Assembly: GCA_002104945.1 (NCBI GenBank)
Contig: MCFH01000027.1
Span: 372,001 to 436,000 of the forward strand
Origin: Piromyces finnis finn
Taxonomy: Eukaryota; Fungi; Neocallimastigomycota
Length of the DNA: 64,000 nt
Direction of reading: 5' to 3'
The stretch's first letter is position 1. Each line of letters begins with the position of its first letter. This document shows positions 15,654 to 24,685 of this stretch, piece after piece. The notes beneath the pieces are model-generated. The model was given only the letters and a program-made list of their open reading frames with translations. It made no database searches and was not told the DNA's origin. The translations under genes were made by a program, and so were the position numbers.

Positions 15654-17966
15654 GTTGATATATTATATTTATTATTAAAAAAAAATAGTAATAAAAAGAA
15701 CGATTGTTTGTTTTGAAATAAATTACTGAAAAATTAAATATAAATTAAATATTATAAATTTGAATTTCTGTTAAAATATATTTTAATTATATATATAAAT
15801 ATATAGATAAATTTTGTTAATATATATTGTTTAATATTATATTATTATTTAGTATTTATATTTACAATTACTACTGTTATACAATTGGAAAATTATGAAG
15901 ACAAACAATTAAACAATAATAAAAAAAACGTTAATTGCGTCCTTGTATAACTATTAACTTTTTTTTTTTTTTTGATAAATTAATTTTAATTTAACATTTG
16001 CAAAATCTTTAATTTTTTTTTTTAAAATAAACTTTTTTTTGATTGGCTAAATAGTTGATTTTTTATATATAAGAAGTAGAATTTATAAATATTATTATTA
16101 TAAATTTTAAATATAATATATACATAATATTAGATAGAAACTAGGTGCCTTTTAATTTCCAAGTGACAAAGAAATCTTTTTAAAAAATATACATACCTAT
16201 AGTATATATAGTATAATAAAAAATCATTTGACTTATTAAATATATATAATACTAGAATTTCAAAAAATAGGTAGAGAATAAGAATATTGAAATATTTACA
16301 TAAATTAAAAACCAAAATAAGAGAATTTTAAATAATATATACTAAATGAATAGTCATTAGTAATGTATTAAAAAAGAAATTATAATCAAATTTTGTATAA
16401 CTAGTAGATATAAATTAATGGTTCTAATTTTTTTAAATTCATTTTCATTTTTATTTTGAAATAATAATAAACATAATAATAAACATAATAATAATAATTA
16501 AATGGCTTTTTGATAATAATAAAGTTTACTATTTTTTATCATTGATAGAAATGGTTTAAAGGAATAATTCATAGATATAAATTGTATTACTTTTTTTTAC
16601 ATATAAGAATATCCTCTAAATTAATAATTTAAAAAATCTATAATTAAATTAATAAATATAATATTTAATCCAATGTGTGTATTTATAAACTATTTTATAT
16701 GTTCTAATATACTGCATTGATTGTCATTTCAAAGAGCTTTAGTTTATTCTTCGGTAATAGTTACTAACAAATAACAAACTTTATAAAATATAAAAAAATG
16801 GAAATATCTATTATTATAATATTTTTAAGCTTTTTGAACACGAATTTTAATTACTATAGTATTTTATTAGGATTTTTATTTTTATATCATTATTTAAATT
16901 ATAATGTAAATTTTTCATATTTAATAAAACAAAGACTGTATTTACAATTAAAGAAAGAGTTTTATATAAAAAAAGGAATGATAATTAACGCAATGCTGTT
17001 AAAAAAGAAAAAGAAAAAAAGAAATAAATGTTTTTTTTTTATAATTAAACAGTTGTTGTTTTTTAATATATTGAAATTTCATATGTCAAATTAAAAATTT
17101 AATAAAATTAATTTAATTATGTTTCATTTTTATTATTTTTTTTTTTTTTAAATACTAACTTTTTTTTATAAAAATGAAAAAAAAAAAAAAAAAAAAGATT
17201 TTATAGTCAATGGTAATAAAGGAAGAAAAAAGGATTTATATTTGATATTAAAGTTTTTATATACATTATTTGCCTTCATAATAATTTCTATATCTGATTT
17301 TAAGTTATTATTAAGTTCTTACATAATAAAAACATCCACAAATTTCAATTTAAATATAGTACAAAAAAATTTTTTTTTTAAAATATCTAATTAACTTTAT
17401 TATATAATATAATATAATATATTGAATTATATATTTTTTATATTTTTAATTATCAAAAAAAAAAAAAGGATCATCATCTTAATATTTATTAATTGGTTTA
17501 TAGATAAAATAAAAACGTCTTTATTTGAATCTTCCCTTAATAAGTATTAATCAAGATCATTTAGAAATAAAATAAAATGATTTATACACCAATTTAAAAA
17601 CAAACAAGTAAATAAAACAATTAATAAATGATAATATATTGGTATAATATATACAATTAAAAATAAAATAAAAAAAACATTCCTATTATATATTTGAAAT
17701 GTATTTTTTAAATATATAGTATTAAAGTTTATTTAAACATTTATTCATTACAAAAAAGCTAACTATATATTTTATTTTATTAATATAGATTATTATATAA
17801 CATATTTATAAATAAAACTATTATATACTATCAGTCTACAAATGAATGTTCAATATACTTGAAATTAATTCAAAACATAAAAACACAAAGTTTATTTATC
17901 AATTATTAATATAACCAAAAATTAAAAAAAAAAAAAAATATTTATATTTAAATATAAATATATAAA

Positions 17967-20900
17967 ATGTCTATATTTTTTTGGATTTTTTTTGGAAGTA
18001 AATAATAAAATATATTTCATAATAATAATATTCAAGCTCTAAATAACAAACACTAATAAATTAAACCTCTATTTTTTTAAATGTTGAATTTTTTATTATT
18101 TAAAGTTTTCATTACCATTGCTTCTGAAGTTTATATAATATATTATATATATTCATTGATTATCAGTATAAGGAATGAAAGAAAACAAAACAATGTCAAA
18201 AATAATAAAGATACAAATATAGAAGAAACAATCAAAAATAATGAATTAGAAGAAATAAAACAAAATAATTCAGAAAAAGATGAAGACTCCAGTAAAACTG
18301 ATAAAGATGGGTGGCCACCAAAAATTATTGAATATTTAGAAAATTGCTTATTCCCACAATATAATGATAAATCTAATCCACCTACAGAATGTTGTACTTG
18401 GGTGAATATTGTTTTTGCAAGATACTTTTTAGAATTACGAAAAGCTAAAGACTTTAAGGAAAGAATGATGAAGAAATTAAATGAAAAATTCACTAGGAAA
18501 TTAAAAAATAATTCATATATTGTAAAGTATTATACAACAAAAAATCAAAATGTTTCGATTTATTTATTATTGTTGAAATTATAAATATTTGGTGGTAACA
18601 GCCTATATTAACTAAAAAAATAAATATTTGAAATATTATATATCAAAAATAATTTCATAAAAAAATAGCAAAGTGTAGCGTTAACAGATTTTGATTTAGG
18701 TGAAGTTTGTCCACATTTTAACGGTGTAAGAGTTAAAAAATCAACTACAGAAAAATTAGAAGTGGTATGTTAATATTGCTTATTAAACTATTCAAAATAA
18801 TATAAATATATAAATATATATATGAATCTTTTAATAAATTATCTTTTAAATTATTAAATCTTTAATTTATAAGAATTTGGAAATGGAAATGGAATATTCA
18901 GGAGCTCCTAATAGTTTAAGTTTTAATTTAGATATAATATTAGTAAAAGGCATAATTATACCTGTGAAAATTAAATTATTAAAATGCAATGGAACGGTAA
19001 TAATAATAATTATAATAATAATAATAATAATAGTAGTAGTAGTAGTAGTAGTAGTAGTAATATAATTTAATTTTTTTGAATAATCGTTATTAAACTTTTA
19101 ATTTTTTTTCTGTATTTCTTGTATATAATTAATGTAGCTTTTAATTGTTGTGCCATATTTAAAGGACCCTACATTATTTGGTATTACATTTGTCAATAAT
19201 CCAAATCCAGAGTTTTCTATTGAAGTTTTATCAAATAAAATGAAGGATAAGAAAAAATATTTACTTTCACCAATATTATCAGTATTAAATAAATTATTAA
19301 AATCATTTTTTGTTGAATTTTGTACTCTCCCAGCAATAAGAACCTTTGATTTACCATTAGTTGCTCCAAAAATACCAATATATGTAAGCATTTTATTCAT
19401 ATATTTTTATTTATTATATATAGTCTATTTCTTAATTATACAAGTACATAATAAATATAGAATAAATTAAAACAATTTCTATAAATATTTATTTAATCTT
19501 AATATATATTATTAACGACTATAATATTCTTTATGTAGGTATATTTGTCAGATAATAAAAAAATGAGTAGTATTAATTTACAGCCACCTCCAATACAATC
19601 AACAAAAAGAAACACTAATAACCAGAAATTATTGGATATTTTCGAAGATAAAACATTCCCAATATATACACATGTTTCATCAAGCAATGCGTTATTATTA
19701 AATGAAAAATTAACATCTACTTTTATCCAATTAGCAAAGGAAAACAATAATGATATAATTAAACTATTAGAAAAGAGACAATCAATTGACCAAAATCCGT
19801 TAAATTTTGAAATTTGGAAGACTCTAAAAAATAAAAATGGTATTCATGTTCAAAAAAAATTAATAAACGAATATGGTGAAAGAGGTTGTATATTTAAAGG
19901 TACATTTGTTGTAAGAATGAATCCAAAAGATGTCTATGGTATAATTAAAAATATGAGTAACGAAGCAAGTGGTTATATTTTTAATGAAACTTTTATTCGT
20001 TCATCAATTGTTAAATGTTTTAACGATGACACATTAGTAAGACATATATCTTTTAAATTAAATCGCCAACAAAATCATGGATATGTATTGTTTGAAGCAC
20101 ATAAGGAATTTAATGAAGATAATCAAAATGATGACTTTTTTGACTATTTATCTAGTGATAAACAAACTGCCATTATAGAAGAAGACGAAAACCAACAAAA
20201 AAGATATGTTGTTGTTTGGAGATCAATTGCAGGAATTAAGAATGAAGAAAATGATAATATGGATACATTAAATAAACAAAAATTATTAAATAGAAAAAAT
20301 AATTTTTCTAAGGAAAGATTAAGAAGTTATACCACAAATGATATTATAGAAAAAGTAAATAGAGAACAATTAATAAATTCCCTTAAACAAAATGATGATG
20401 AAAAACTTTTGAATAATAAAAATGAAAATCTTAAAGTAAATGATGATTCATTACTAAAAGTAAACTCTAGCAATAGTATTAAAAGAGAACATGTATCATC
20501 TAATTCATATTTTTCACTTCACGGATTACTTAAAAATGAAATTGATTCAACAATGGAAATTTTACAAAAATCTACTATAATAAATGATAAATCTGAACAT
20601 ATACCAAGATTGAAGAAAGAGAACAGTAAGTATAACTTGTTATTATTGTTGTTATTAATATTGTCAGTAGTAGTAGTAGTAGTTCTAATAGTTCTAATTA
20701 GTTGTGTTGAAGATGTTAGAATTATATCAATGAAAAGCTTAATTATAAAACCATATTAAATAGTTTAATTAATTATTAATATATGTTATCACAATTAAAA
20801 AATAAATAATAAATTCATTTCAAATAGGTTTTAGGGGAAATATTTTAGAAAAAGATAGTCATATAATGGAAAAAACCACTTCAAATTCGAATATAAGTGA

Positions 20901-23455
20901 GACAAATAATAATAATAATAAAATAAAAGAAAATCAAGAATTTTCAGAAAATATAGATAATCTAGATGTAAAGGTTACTTCATCAAAAGATGATATCGTA
21001 TATGAAGAAAATTTCAAAATAAATAATAGACCAGCAGGAATGTTTAAACTTTATTTATCAGATGACGAAGAACCATATGATAATTACTTGAATTCAAATC
21101 GAACTGATTCGTCAACTTCATCTTTAGCTTCCCTTTCGGAAAAATATGAAGACAATTCATCAGTAATTAATGAAGATTCCTTAGAAAAGAAAGATGAATT
21201 ACTAGACACATTTGGTAATGACTTATTAGAAACAGATAAGAACGCTGAACTATCAATTTTAGAACCAAAACCAACAAATGTAAACGATGATAAATCATAT
21301 GATCCTCAAAATATAAAAGAATGTCCTATAAAACAAAATAATGATAAAGATGAATTATATGAAAATATTAATGCTTTATTAATAAAAGGATTTTATTTAG
21401 GTAAGGGAAATTATACTAACGCTGTTAAAAAAAAAAAAAAAATAAACTATAAAATAAATTTCATTATTATATAGAATAAAATACTAAATATAAAATTTCA
21501 AATAATATTAACAGAACCTCAACTTGGTGATCCAGAAGCATGTTATTTAACGGTTATATCTCAGTTTGAGTCTAGCTTTAAGAAATTTGAAGCTACTTAT
21601 GAATATTGTAGAAAATTGAAAAAATATTTAGAAGATCAAAATAGTACTGCACATTACAATTCTAATATAAATATAACAGAAGAAGATAAAAAGAAATCTT
21701 TTGGAAGGTCAATATCTAGTGAAAATATTGCTAAACTTGGAAAAATAAAGAATTATTTAAGTAGTGGTTTGGTGAAGGTCAAACGGTCACATAGTAGTAT
21801 GAAAGACTCTACAAAACCACCAATGTTAAAATATGATACACTAAGCATGACTAAATCAAAAAATGACGTTATATCTCCTACAAAACTAAAAGTAGATATA
21901 TACGCTCTTAACAATAAAATAAAACCGGAAGAACATAATTCATCAAATAGTCCACAAAGTGATGCAATAAATGAAGCTAATGAGACTTCTAGTAATGAAA
22001 TGAACATATCACCTATAAAATACTCTCCTTTATCTAATAACGATGAATTATCAAAATCAATTCCTGTTCCACCAATATCATCTATGCCAAATACCACAGC
22101 TACAACAAACAACTCACAAAGTAATAAAAAAAGTGTAATTAGAATATTTAAAAAAGTACAAAAAGTAGTAACAAAAAGATCATCATCATCAACTAATAAT
22201 AGCATTAGTATTGTATCTGATGAACGCCCAAGTCCTAAGAATGAAGATAATAATTGCACTTCTAATTTATATCTTTCAGATATTTGTCATTCCACAGAAT
22301 CTGTGAATTCATTAGACGAAGAAAAAGAAAAAGAAATTCATACAAAAAATAATATTGTTATATTGAAGCATGTTAATAGACCAAATATTCCATTAAATAA
22401 GCAAAACTTTACAAATCAATTTATTAATAATAAAGAAACAATTAAAGTTGAATCTCAACATCTAGGTGGTGAAACTTGGAATGATTTAAGATTTGAATTT
22501 AATGAGGCAAAAAATCTACCGCTTGATTTCAGCGTTTCTTTTAAACCAAATATAATAGGTTTATTTGACAAATGGAAGCATATTTATTCTGAATCTCCAA
22601 ATGAACCAGGTGTATTTACAATTATCCCAACATATACCTGTAGTACTTCACAGACACTAAAAATCATTAATGGCTGTATAAGTATCTATAGTTTCCCACC
22701 CGGTATATTTATATTTAAATGGGAAAATAATGCTAGAAAAACAGCAAAACACATTTCATTTAGATTTGCTATACAACCTGTTACCTTATTATGTTCCCCC
22801 ATTCAAAATTCACTTTCTCAATATTGTAATGAATATAATAGCGTTGTTAGTATCCGACAAAGATCATGTGGTACTTTTTCATTGCCTTATATCCCGTTAA
22901 GCGACTTTTGTTATAAATCTATTGGAATATCGGGAAGAACAGCATTTTTGAGTTATCAAATTTATACCAAGGGTAGTGATATTCAATTTGGAATTTTATT
23001 TGAACCATTACACGAAAGTAACAATGTATCTATGCAAGAATTATCAATACAACAGCAACAACAAAGTATTGAAGTAATTAATTCTAAAAGACTATCGAAT
23101 AGAAAAACAAGTAGTTATTCAAATATTTTATCAGAAGAAAGTTATCGTAATAATATATTAGAAGAAAGTAGATTCAGACATTCAGACGAAAACTTACTTT
23201 CACCTAAAACCGAAGTAGTAATTGAAAATATAAATCTAACAAGTGAAATACATACTAATATTGGTAAAGATTCATTTGAACTTAAACCAAATCAAAGATA
23301 TGTTGTCCCAATTGCAAAATGTAATTCACATAAAAATGTATTAAATGGAACAATACCAATAGCTAACAAATTCGGTATATACACCTTTGTTTTTAATAAT
23401 TCATTTTCAATTGTTACCTCTAAAACACTGGAATTAAATATTAAATTATTAATTC

Positions 23456-23460
<5 letters not shown>
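17967..23460 (+). CDS. Large predicted lipid-transfer protein: N-terminal TM, SMP (TULIP) domain, START-like domain, disordered linker, two GOLD-like domains; 8 exons, about 1500 aa
   Basis: Exons join in phase from the ATG at 17967. SMP-like ECCTWVNIVFARYFLELR, LTDFDLGEVCPHF and FCTLPAIRTF; START-like WKTLKNKNGIHVQKK...CIFKGTFVV...RYVVVWRSI; GOLD-like PGIFIFKWEN and SYQIYTKGSDIQFGILF...GIYTFVFNNSFSIVTSKTLEL. Confidence 0.7.
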
Positions 23461-23490
<30 letters not shown>

Positions 23491-24685
23491 AGTATTTTCA
23501 TAAAAATGCACATAATCCTAAATATAAATGTTCTATCTATTCATTTTTCCATTTCCTATCTATTTATTATTTATATTAGTTATATTAGTTATTTATTTAT
23601 TTATTGTTATTAATATTTTTATAAAAATTATTAATATTCATTTTTTTTTTTTAATATTGAATATAATATATATATATATATATTTTTTAAACTTTTAACA
23701 TGTATAATATTATGTTTTTATTAGATATTTTATTAGTAAAGATTAGAAACTTAATTCGCTTTTTCGAATGTTATAATTATTAATATATATATTAATAATA
23801 TTACTAACATAAACTCTCACTGTTTTTTTTTTTTTTTTTTACTAAATATTATATATTAGCCCAAAGCATGTATATACAATAATTATAAAAATTTATAATT
23901 TATAATAAAATAATAATACTTATAAAAAGTTAGAATTTAAAGTTTTTTATATTTATTAGTTTATTTTTTATCTGTATATTTATTAATAAAAGTAAAAATT
24001 TTATTTATTACTGTTAAGAGGTAAAATCATATAAATAAAAAAGGACGACGTAGTAAAATATATAAAATGTATTTTTTTAATAATACAATAAAAAAGCAAA
24101 AATAAATATAATATTAATAAATCTATTATCTTAAAATAAATAAATAAAAAAAAAAAAAAAAAAAAAAAAAACTATCTGTCCATTTCTTTTTTGTATAAAA
24201 ATTGCTTAAATATTTACTTTATTAAGTAAAATTAATTATATACAAAATAAAAAAATAAGGTATAAAAAATATTGAGATTATGTTTATAAAAGATTATATT
24301 TTAGAGTTTGTCAATAATTTATCATTTATAATAAATAATCATAGTGAAAAAGTTTATATAATTTATTAAGTTTTAATAGTAATAATATTACAATTCATAT
24401 TTCATTTCTATTCATTATTCCCTATACATTGTATAATGAATAAATAGTATTATTATTATTTTATATATCATAATAAAAAGTAATATTGTGGATTAAATAC
24501 TTCATTAAAAGAAATCCTGAAATCATTAATTATTATTAAAATCATATCAATTGTGGATTTTAGGAGATTTTATTCGCATATTTTTTTTTAAATAAATTTT
24601 AAAATTATATCGATCGATACATATTCATAAGATTTTTTTTCTCAAAAAATAAAAAAAAAAAAAGTATACATAAAAACAAAGCAAA

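What the first reader, a model, noticed from the sequence alone, without database searches (positions are those of the whole stretch)
17967..23460. TM-SMP-START-GOLD-GOLD: a candidate new multi-module lipid-transfer tether
One spliced ORF of about 1500 aa appears to fuse an ER-type N-terminal anchor and SMP tunnel (Mmm1/PDZD8-like) with a START-like lipid-binding pocket and two C-terminal GOLD-like beta-sandwiches. Known SMP proteins pair SMP with C2, PH, PDZ or C1 domains, and GOLD usually pairs with CRAL-TRIO or ACBD. I do not recognise this combination. Inference: it relays lipids at a contact site such as ER-Golgi or ER-hydrogenosome, of interest in anaerobic fungi that lack ergosterol and typical mitochondria.
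Basis: partly seen in the sequence, partly recalled or inferred. Interest (0 to 1): 0.72.

Follow-up and report, generated by a model that had tools for sequence, protein, structure and literature searches.

The report
Membrane-anchored lipid carrier with two lipid pockets
This gut-fungus gene encodes one long, membrane-anchored protein that carries two different lipid-carrying modules and two docking modules, a combination found only in swimming-spore fungi and apparently never described, although its function is untested.

Summary
Window 18081-23460 (+) is a seven-exon GT-AG gene of Piromyces finnis. It encodes a 1503-aa protein identical to the public model ORX48418.1 / A0A1Y1V6I7, which is named only "SMP-LTD domain-containing protein".

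An intron-free orthologous contig carries the whole chain in one ORF, and the window's exons abut exactly on it. It is therefore one gene, not two.

- **SMP:** confirmed by sequence (Pfam MMM1 46 bits; profile hit to the Mmm1 crystal chain, E 1.5e-8).
- **START:** confirmed by structure only (AF2 model, Z 21.4 to ACOT11 START). It is split by a disordered insert of about 310 aa.
- **Two GOLD domains:** both confirmed by structure (Z about 8.7). The second is also confirmed by sequence (ACBD3 GOLD, E 2e-10).

The whole architecture is conserved in Chytridiomycota and Neocallimastigomycota and was found nowhere else. It is therefore not an adaptation to anaerobic life.

Three orthologues appear in the SMP dataset of Wideman et al. 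2018, which reported an unnamed paralog "specific to flagellated fungi". I found no paper describing the START and GOLD parts.

Most likely it is an ER-anchored tether with two lipid-transfer modules whose GOLD pair binds a partner organelle. Target, lipids and localisation are inferred. No RNA reads could be obtained.

The parts
18081..23460 (+). Whole gene. Seven exons: E1 18081-18521, E2 18669-18764, E3 18874-18996, E4 19138-19383, E5 19539-20625, E6 20828-21400, E7 21515-23460 (stop TAA included). It encodes 1503 aa.
   Evidence: The frames join through six GT-AG introns. Exon translations are exact consecutive substrings of P0005. All exons are colinear in the related genomic contig L001. 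The window's exons abut exactly in the intron-free orthologous contig L003.
18084..18167 (+). N-terminal hydrophobic helix (residues about 2-29), the presumed membrane anchor. Basic residues follow it, and it contains a Glu that is conserved across the family.
   Evidence: The highest Kyte-Doolittle 19-mer windows of the protein all lie at residues 1-28. The helix aligns with hydrophobic N-termini of chytrid orthologues. The database lists a precomputed Pfam PDZD8_N hit.
18303..19377 (+). SMP (TULIP) lipid-transfer domain, residues about 75-300, spread over exons 1-4.
   Evidence: Pfam MMM1 scores 46.4 bits (cut-off 21.9), E 3.9e-12, on P0005:1-330, and 11 of 14 family members match. The family profile hits the Mmm1 crystal chain 5yk6 at E 1.5e-8 over the whole SMP domain. 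Exon-wise hits continue along the profile (8-60, then 63-89).
19689..20234 (+). START domain, N-terminal part (residues 353-534): helix a1, strands b1-b3, helices a2-a3, strands b4-b7.
   Evidence: The AF2 model mbff8737122c0 has high pLDDT in these elements. VIA gives Z 21.4, rmsd 2.5 A over 195 residues to ACOT11 START, and Z 18-19 to STARD4, CERT, STARD10 and STARD5. Foldseek's top 49 hits are all START domains.
20235..21372 (+). Disordered insert inside the START domain, between b7 and b8 (residues 535-846, including intron 5). It is low in complexity and rich in Ser, Asn and acidic residues.
   Evidence: pLDDT is below 50. Identity is 37-57% within anaerobic fungi against 65-96% in the folded modules. 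The insert is only 43-169 aa in chytrids.
21373..21648 (+). START domain, C-terminal part (residues 847-900): strands b8-b9 and the C-terminal helix a4. It spans intron 6.
   Evidence: The model elements E514-524, E527-539 and H550-565 have pLDDT 77-93, and all START alignments run to model residue 566. This is the best-conserved START block across the family.
21691..21798 (+). Conserved basic helix-like motif (residues 915-950, ENIAKLGKIKNYLSSGLVKVKR...). Its role is unknown.
   Evidence: Identity is 63-94% within anaerobic fungi and 19-33% to chytrids. An HMM built from it re-finds it in nearly all family members. It was not modelled.
22399..22788 (+). GOLD domain 1 (residues 1151-1280).
   Evidence: In the AF2 model m6fcd5039f02d, pLDDT is mostly above 90. 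VIA gives Z 8.7 to the SEC14L2 GOLD domain (rmsd 2.9 A, 106 aa), 8.4 to ACBD3 GOLD and 7.7 to p24beta1 GOLD (rmsd 1.7 A, 90 of 93 aa), with model range 2-129. There is no Pfam hit. The GOLD1 HMM cross-hits GOLD2 C-terminal parts in several members.
22789..23457 (+). GOLD domain 2 (residues 1281-1503), with a disordered insert at about 1354-1449 (window about 23014-23283). ACBD3-type GOLD_2 domains have an insert at the same position.
   Evidence: Pfam GOLD_2 gives E 3.9e-6, 27.6 bits (cut-off 28.4) on exon 7, and scores above the cut-off in homologues P0007, P0009, P0010 and P0018. The family profile hits ACBD3 GOLD chains at E 2e-10 in two stretches flanking the insert, and SEC14L2/3 at about 1e-8. 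VIA gives Z 8.7 to ACBD3 GOLD (24% id) and 7.7 to p24gamma2 GOLD.

Best explanation
The gene encodes a single-copy, 1503-aa membrane-contact-site protein of a family restricted to zoosporic (flagellated) fungi. An N-terminal transmembrane helix anchors it, most likely in the ER as in its SMP relatives Mmm1 and PDZD8. The rest of the protein would then face the cytosol. An SMP domain would carry glycerophospholipids, probably as a dimer. A canonical START domain, reached through a flexible linker, would hold one lipid molecule in its helix-grip pocket. Long disordered stretches then lead to a rigid pair of GOLD beta-sandwiches at the C-terminus. In known proteins such as ACBD3, SEC14-like proteins and p24, GOLD domains are protein-binding modules of the Golgi and early secretory pathway. 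The GOLD pair would therefore bind a partner on the opposite membrane and set the contact site, most plausibly ER-Golgi or ER-endosome. What is shown: the gene structure, the single ORF, the four module types, and their order and conservation. What is inferred: ER localisation, lipid transfer by either module, which lipids, GOLD-mediated targeting and the partner organelle.
For: - **Gene model:**; it is identical to public P0005.
- **One transcript unit:** the orthologue P0039 is an uninterrupted 1611-aa ORF on contig L003. It runs across every predicted junction, and the window's exons abut there with the introns precisely missing. P0003 on L002 fuses exons 6 and 7 as predicted. The chytrid models P0034 and P0041 carry JGI names showing they were seeded by Trinity transcripts, and P0034 contains every module from SMP to GOLD2.
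- **SMP:**
- **START fold:** Z 21.4, well above generic Bet v1/SRPBCC folds at Z 11-12.
- **GOLD x2:**
- **Selection:** folded modules are 65-96% identical among anaerobic fungi against 37-68% for most linkers and inserts. All full-length chytrid members keep the same module order.
- **Copy number:** single copy in the genome.
- **Not Mmm1:** a distinct, stronger Mmm1 gene exists elsewhere in the genome, and the SMP shares only 25% identity over 55 aa with it.
Against: The START domain has no sequence-level match to Pfam START or to any PDB chain, so it rests on one AF2 model built from a 17-sequence alignment. A 310-aa insert could disable or regulate the pocket. The GOLD Z-scores of about 8 lie in the range the tool calls middling, and GOLD1 has structural support only. 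GOLD domains do not always mean Golgi. Nothing here tests the membrane in which the N-terminal helix sits. L003 could be an intron-less genomic copy rather than an mRNA, although that would still show a single ORF.
Confidence: 0.7

Rival explanations
1. It is the zoosporic-fungal orthologue of animal PDZD8 (an ER to late-endosome/lysosome tether) in which START and GOLD replaced the PDZ, C1 and coiled-coil parts. It would then work at ER-endolysosome contacts rather than at the Golgi.
For: The database's precomputed Pfam hits list PDZD8_N (PF26547) alongside MMM1 for P0005, P0037, P0038, P0039 and P0040. The layout (N-terminal TM, then SMP, then a long C-terminal extension with targeting modules) is the same as in PDZD8 (PMC11320393).
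Against: No PDZ or C1 domain was found. Wideman et al. 2018 recover the flagellated-fungal sequences as a paralog separate from PDZD8. I could not see the tree itself, and I did not build one. PF26547 is not in the local Pfam copy, so I could not reproduce that hit.
Confidence: 0.15
2. Only the SMP domain moves lipids. The START-like fold is a degenerate, regulatory or scaffolding module, for example a lipid sensor or an autoinhibitory domain gated by its large Ser-rich insert, and the GOLD pair mediates oligomerisation rather than targeting.
For: START is undetectable by sequence profiles. It carries a 43-347 aa disordered insert in every member. The insert holds a Ser-rich acidic motif conserved within anaerobic fungi.
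Against: The fold is complete (a1, nine strands, C-terminal helix) and superposes on ligand-bound STARTs at rmsd 2.5-3.4 A over about 200 residues. Both START halves are under clear constraint from anaerobic fungi to chytrids.
Confidence: 0.12
3. The fused model is an annotation artefact: two neighbouring genes (TM-SMP in exons 1-4; START-GOLD-GOLD starting at the in-frame ATG 19563 in exon 5).
For: Exon 5 has an in-frame Met nine codons after its acceptor site. No reads from P. finnis itself were available.
Against: Sequence is conserved from the acceptor AG itself, while the intron is full of indels. There is no conserved stop or tail after exon 4. The uninterrupted ORF of L003 reads ...PKIPIYVYVS... 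straight through the junction. All full-length chytrid orthologues carry SMP and START in one model.
Confidence: 0.03

Closest known systems
Unnamed SMP paralog 'specific to flagellated fungi' of Wideman et al. 2018 (F1000Res 7:1088, PMC6069729)
   Same: Three orthologues of this gene are in that paper's sequence list: Anaeromyces robustus 297130 (P0038), Entophlyctis helioformis 486021 (P0034) and Globomyces pollinis-pini 590046 (P0041). The taxonomic range I find (Chytridiomycota plus Neocallimastigomycota only) fits their description.
   Different: That paper analysed SMP domains only and left the clade unnamed. Its text says nothing about START or GOLD modules. I could not see their figure, so the assignment of these three sequences to that clade is very likely but not verified.
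Mmm1 (ERMES subunit) and PDZD8
   Same: Both have an N-terminal membrane anchor followed directly by an SMP domain of the same subgroup. Pfam MMM1 scores over its cut-off, and the family profile matches the Mmm1 crystal chain over the whole domain. PDZD8_N is listed among the precomputed hits.
   Different: It is not Mmm1: P. finnis has a separate gene with much stronger MMM1 matches, and identity to it is about 25%. It is not PDZD8-like downstream, having no PDZ, C1 or coiled coil. Mmm1 has no C-terminal modules at all.
CERT / STARD11 (PH-FFAT-START ceramide carrier at ER-Golgi contacts)
   Same: Both have a canonical START fold (Z 19.0, rmsd 3.3 A, 203 residues). The logic is also shared: an ER attachment, a START pocket and a module that picks the other membrane, joined by disordered Ser-rich linkers.
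   Different: CERT binds the ER through VAP and the Golgi through a PH domain. Here the ER attachment would be a transmembrane helix, and the candidate targeting module is a GOLD pair. There is also an additional SMP domain. Sequence identity is only about 11%, and the lipid is unknown.
ACBD3/GCP60 and SEC14L1-4 (GOLD-containing lipid-related proteins)
   Same: GOLD2 is sequence-homologous to the ACBD3 and SEC14L2-4 GOLD domains, with an insert at the same place as in ACBD3. SEC14L1 also combines two lipid-binding modules with a C-terminal GOLD (own knowledge).
   Different: Those proteins have one GOLD, are soluble, and pair it with ACB or CRAL-TRIO domains, not with SMP or START. A tandem GOLD pair after START was not found outside this family: only 32 hits among 1.84 billion representatives. 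Every named hit comes from a chytrid or an anaerobic fungus. All but one of the 32 matched at least one of the family's module profiles.

Membership tests
SMP / TULIP domain proteins (Mmm1-PDZD8 subgroup) | Sequence match to the SMP profile above the curated threshold | tested here: met
   Pfam MMM1 scores 46.4 bits against a cut-off of 21.9 on P0005:1-330, and 11 of 14 family members match. The whole-protein scan missed it. The exon-wise scan gave weak but colinear hits.
SMP / TULIP domain proteins (Mmm1-PDZD8 subgroup) | Homology over the full SMP domain to a solved SMP structure | tested here: met
   The profile of alignment A7 against the Mmm1 chain 5yk6_A gives E 1.5e-8, query 90-289 against chain 22-246. 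E-Syt2 and Mdm12 give weak hits.
SMP / TULIP domain proteins (Mmm1-PDZD8 subgroup) | Lipid binding and dimerisation | not testable with these tools
   This needs biochemistry or an experimental structure.
Mmm1 (ERMES) orthologue | Best reciprocal Mmm1 match in the genome | tested here: not met
   A different locus (G000:C222:704259-705401) covers MMM1 profile positions 2-236 with three matches of 32-42 bits each. This gene was not among the listed matches. Identity between the two is 25% over 55 aa.
PDZD8 | PDZ and C1 domains after the SMP domain | tested here: not met
   No PDZ or C1 hit appeared in any exon or in P0005. A PDZD8_N hit is reported only by the database's precomputed list.
START (StARkin) domain | Helix-grip fold: N-terminal helix, nine-stranded curved sheet, long C-terminal helix | tested here: met
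   The AF2 element order matches. VIA gives Z 21.4 at 2.5 A over 195 aa to ACOT11, with 35 START entries at Z 17-21 and bacterial or plant Bet v1-like folds at only Z 11-12. Foldseek E-values go down to 5e-7.
START (StARkin) domain | Sequence match to Pfam START or to a solved START | tested here: not met
   There was no START hit at E up to 5 on exon 5 or at E up to 0.1 in seven chytrid and metagenomic relatives (P0013-P0018, P0024). There was no PDB hit with either the single sequence or the family profile at E up to 10.
START (StARkin) domain | Closed hydrophobic pocket that holds a lipid | not testable with these tools
   Model coordinates could not be inspected, and there is no ligand assay.
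GOLD domain | Beta-sandwich of GOLD topology (both copies) | tested here: met
   The top 19 VIA rows are all GOLD domains. Copy 1 (model 2-129) reaches Z 8.7 and copy 2 (model 144-354) reaches Z 7.7-8.7. These Z values are middling, but the hits agree on one family.
GOLD domain | Sequence homology to GOLD_2 | tested here: met
   This holds for copy 2 only. Pfam GOLD_2 gives 27.6 bits (cut-off 28.4) here and 30-33 bits in homologues. The family profile against ACBD3 GOLD gives E 2e-10. Copy 1 has no Pfam hit, only HMM cross-hits to copy 2.
Flagellated-fungi SMP paralog (Wideman 2018) | Falls in that clade of the published SMP tree | tested here: inconclusive
   Three orthologues' JGI ids are in the paper's sequence list, and the taxonomic range fits. 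The figure is not held, and I built no tree.

The most novel reading that the evidence does not exclude
A lipid-transfer protein that unites a tubular SMP module and a box-like START module on one ER anchor, aimed by a tandem GOLD pair. It would have arisen once in the ancestor of zoosporic fungi and been lost with the flagellum. It would serve a contact site peculiar to zoospore-forming cells, for example the lipid-globule/microbody complex or Golgi-derived membranes used during zoospore cleavage. It might couple bulk phospholipid flow to transfer of one specific lipid.
Probability: 0.15. Interest if true: 0.7.

Novelty: new variant of a known kind. Interest (0 to 1): 0.5.

Why it matters
Known SMP proteins pair the SMP domain with C2, PH, PDZ or C1 modules (2024 review, PMC11320393), and known START and GOLD proteins are soluble. 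This family places two mechanistically different lipid-transfer modules and a tandem GOLD pair on one membrane anchor. It has been conserved from chytrids to rumen fungi. It gives a full domain architecture to an SMP clade that was probably noticed in 2018 and left unnamed. It also offers a natural test of whether SMP and START modules cooperate at one contact site. Finally, it adds a marker gene to the set lost when fungi gave up the zoospore. It says nothing specific about anaerobiosis, hydrogenosomes or sterol loss.

Tried and rejected
- **Upstream ATG at 17967.** Rejected as the start codon: a stop follows after 12 codons, and the only possible splice runs into a stop.
- **Sequence-level START detection.** Pfam and NCBIfam on exon 5 and on chytrid homologues found no START. 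PDB sequence searches with exon 5 and with the START family profile found nothing.
- **Exon-7 profile against PDB.** The profile including linkers found nothing. Trimming to the GOLD region did find hits.
- **Word-index search with exon 7.** It found only fragments because of its length window. The exhaustive search was needed to reach the full-length proteins.
- **An irrelevant paper.** A 2026 paper on fungal sphingolipid proteins matched 'SMP' only through the SMPD gene names.
- **Earlier findings of this scan.** They hold nothing on this gene.
- **Joined exon chain.** No exon chain joined from the window was sent to any search or fold tool. Exons were searched one by one by reference. Whole-protein work used the public protein P0005 returned by the search. 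In one script the exon strings were concatenated only to count length and GC.


Full report
**What is in the sequence**

The window is extremely AT-rich: GC is 0.10-0.18 outside coding sequence and about 0.26 inside. Between 18081 and 23460 on the + strand, seven open stretches join in frame through six introns of 109-202 nt. All six begin with GT and end with AG.

| Exon | Window coordinates |
|---|---|
| E1 | 18081-18521 |
| E2 | 18669-18764 |
| E3 | 18874-18996 |
| E4 | 19138-19383 |
| E5 | 19539-20625 |
| E6 | 20828-21400 |
| E7 | 21515-23460 |

E5/E6 and E6/E7 share split codons, AGT (Ser) and GAA (Glu). The product has 1503 residues.

**The model is already public**

The exhaustive protein search returned P0005, also 1503 aa. 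Every exon translation is an exact, consecutive substring of it. It is ORX48418.1 / UniProt A0A1Y1V6I7 of Piromyces finnis, named 'hypothetical protein' and 'SMP-LTD domain-containing protein'. The gene model is therefore annotated, but only its SMP domain is reflected in the name.

Exons were searched separately by reference. Whole-protein analyses used P0005 by its id.

**One gene or two**

- A related metagenomic genomic contig (L001, about 75% protein identity) has all seven exons in the same order. The three small SMP exons have the same sizes there and 93-95% identity.
- At the critical exon 4/5 junction the intron is riddled with indels, while conservation resumes exactly at the acceptor AG.
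- Contig L003 carries an uninterrupted 1611-aa ORF (P0039, 59-60% identity). It reads straight through every predicted junction (...NNSYIQNV......KLEVNLE......CNGTLLIVVPY......PKIPIYVYVS......IKGFYLEPQLGDPE...).
- At nucleotide level the window's exons abut on L003, with the introns precisely absent.
- L002, from a relative 77% identical in nucleotides to L003, has non-homologous AT-rich sequence where L003 continues into exon 5. L003 therefore behaves like a spliced mRNA. Even if L003 were genomic, it would still show a single ORF.
- L002 itself lacks intron 6 and fuses exons 6 and 7 exactly as predicted.
- Chytrid models named by JGI as seeded by Trinity transcripts (Entophlyctis 486021, Globomyces 590046) belong to the family. 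The Entophlyctis protein contains all modules.

**The modules**

1. *Anchor.* The only strongly hydrophobic region lies at residues 1-28.
2. *SMP, residues about 75-300.*
   - Pfam MMM1 scores 46.4 bits (cut-off 21.9) on the first 330 residues, and 11 of 14 family members match.
   - A family profile hits the Mmm1 crystal chain 5yk6 at E 1.5e-8 over the entire SMP domain.
   - The database also lists a precomputed PDZD8_N hit.
3. *START, residues 353-534 plus 847-900.*
   - No sequence method sees it.
   - An AlphaFold2 model from a 17-sequence family alignment gives the full helix-grip element order, with pLDDT mostly 75-93 in the ordered parts.
   - Foldseek's first 49 PDB hits are all START domains.
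   - VIA gives Z 21.4 (rmsd 2.5 A, 195 residues) to ACOT11 START and Z 18-19 to STARD4, CERT, STARD10 and STARD5. Generic Bet v1-like folds reach only Z 11-12.
   - The domain is interrupted between b7 and b8 by a disordered insert: about 310 aa here and 43-169 aa in chytrids.
4. *Basic motif.* A conserved basic helix-like motif lies at residues 915-950.
5. *Two GOLD domains, residues 1151-1280 and 1281-1503.*
   - The model has pTM 0.70, with pLDDT mostly above 90 outside an insert in the second copy.
   - The top 19 VIA rows are all GOLD domains (ACBD3, SEC14L2/3/4, p24/TMED). Separate alignments cover the first copy (model 2-129, Z up to 8.7) and the second (model 144-354, Z 7.7-8.7).
   - The second copy is also homologous by sequence. 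Pfam GOLD_2 gives E 3.9e-6 here and scores above the cut-off in homologues.
   - The family profile against ACBD3 GOLD gives E 2e-10, in two stretches flanking an insert at the same place as in ACBD3.
   - The first copy rests on structure plus HMM cross-hits to the second copy.

**Family and distribution**

A profile of the C-terminal half found only 32 proteins at E <= 0.001 among 1.84 billion representatives. Every named one comes from Chytridiomycota or Neocallimastigomycota. The chytrids include Synchytrium, Batrachochytrium, Polychytrium, Nowakowskiella, Globomyces, Boothiomyces, Polyrhizophydium, Entophlyctis, Rhizophlyctis, Physocladia and a Chytridiales isolate. The anaerobic fungi are Piromyces, Anaeromyces and Neocallimastix.

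Module HMMs built from the alignment show the same order in every full-length member: SMP, START-N, START-C, basic motif, GOLD1, GOLD2. Folded modules are 65-96% identical among anaerobic fungi and 17-42% identical to chytrids. Inserts are 37-64% and about 0-14% respectively.

The gene is single-copy in P. finnis.

**Relation to what is known**

P. finnis has a different locus with much stronger MMM1 matches (G000:C222:704259-705401). That locus shares only 25% identity over 55 aa with this SMP. This gene is therefore a paralog of Mmm1, not Mmm1 itself.

Wideman et al. [quoted passage not shown] Their sequence list contains Anaeromyces 297130, Entophlyctis 486021 and Globomyces 590046, which are orthologues P0038, P0034 and P0041 of this gene. 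The SMP clade has thus very probably been seen before, unnamed.

I found no text describing START or GOLD modules in it. Four full-text searches gave no paper with the combination. A 2024 review of SMP proteins contains neither word.

**Mechanism**

By analogy with Mmm1, PDZD8, E-Syt and Tex2, the N-terminal helix would sit in the ER with the rest of the protein in the cytosol. The SMP would carry glycerophospholipids, and the START would carry one lipid of unknown class. Its nearest structures bind fatty acids, sterols and ceramide, which does not discriminate between classes.

The disordered linkers give reach. The C-terminal GOLD pair would bind a protein on the partner membrane. Known GOLD domains point to the Golgi and early secretory pathway, so ER-Golgi is the best guess and ER-endolysosome (PDZD8-like) the second. 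All of this is inference.

**Verdict**

This is a new variant of a known kind: a lineage-restricted SMP tether with an undescribed START plus tandem-GOLD extension. Interest is moderate.

Noticed in passing
G000:C222:704259-705401 (- strand; loci L004-L006) and G000:C172:464949-465131 (L007): The genome has a separate gene whose three exons cover Pfam MMM1 positions 2-236, each at 32-42 bits. It is probably the true Mmm1 of an ERMES complex in this hydrogenosome-bearing fungus. A further weak SMP-like match lies on another contig.
   Followed up: partly
L002:1-310 and L002:900-915, compared with window 21401-21514: A relative (about 60% protein identity) has no intron at the exon 6/7 junction but does seem to keep the intron before exon 6. 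Intron 6 has therefore been gained or lost within the anaerobic fungi.
   Followed up: partly
window 21088-21165 (P0005 residues about 752-777, inside the START insert): A Ser-rich acidic motif (NRTDSSTSSLASLSEKYED) is almost invariant among anaerobic-fungal orthologues, although it sits in an otherwise poorly conserved disordered insert. It recalls the phospho-regulated serine-repeat motif of CERT. It is not conserved in chytrids.
   Followed up: no
window 18997-19062 and 20660-20700: Introns 3 and 5 begin with ATA/GTA trinucleotide repeats. These create the spurious poly-Ile/poly-Val ORF tails seen in the mechanical ORF list.
   Followed up: no
window 18126-18128 (Glu16 of the N-terminal helix): A glutamate in the middle of the presumed transmembrane helix is conserved from anaerobic fungi to chytrids (consensus ...VE...). 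This is unusual for a simple anchor and may mark an interaction within the membrane.
   Followed up: no
window 23461-23491 and 17925-17940: Long A runs lie directly after the stop codon (about 30 A) and upstream of the start codon. This is typical of this genome's intergenic DNA, and no terminator or promoter analysis was attempted.
   Followed up: no
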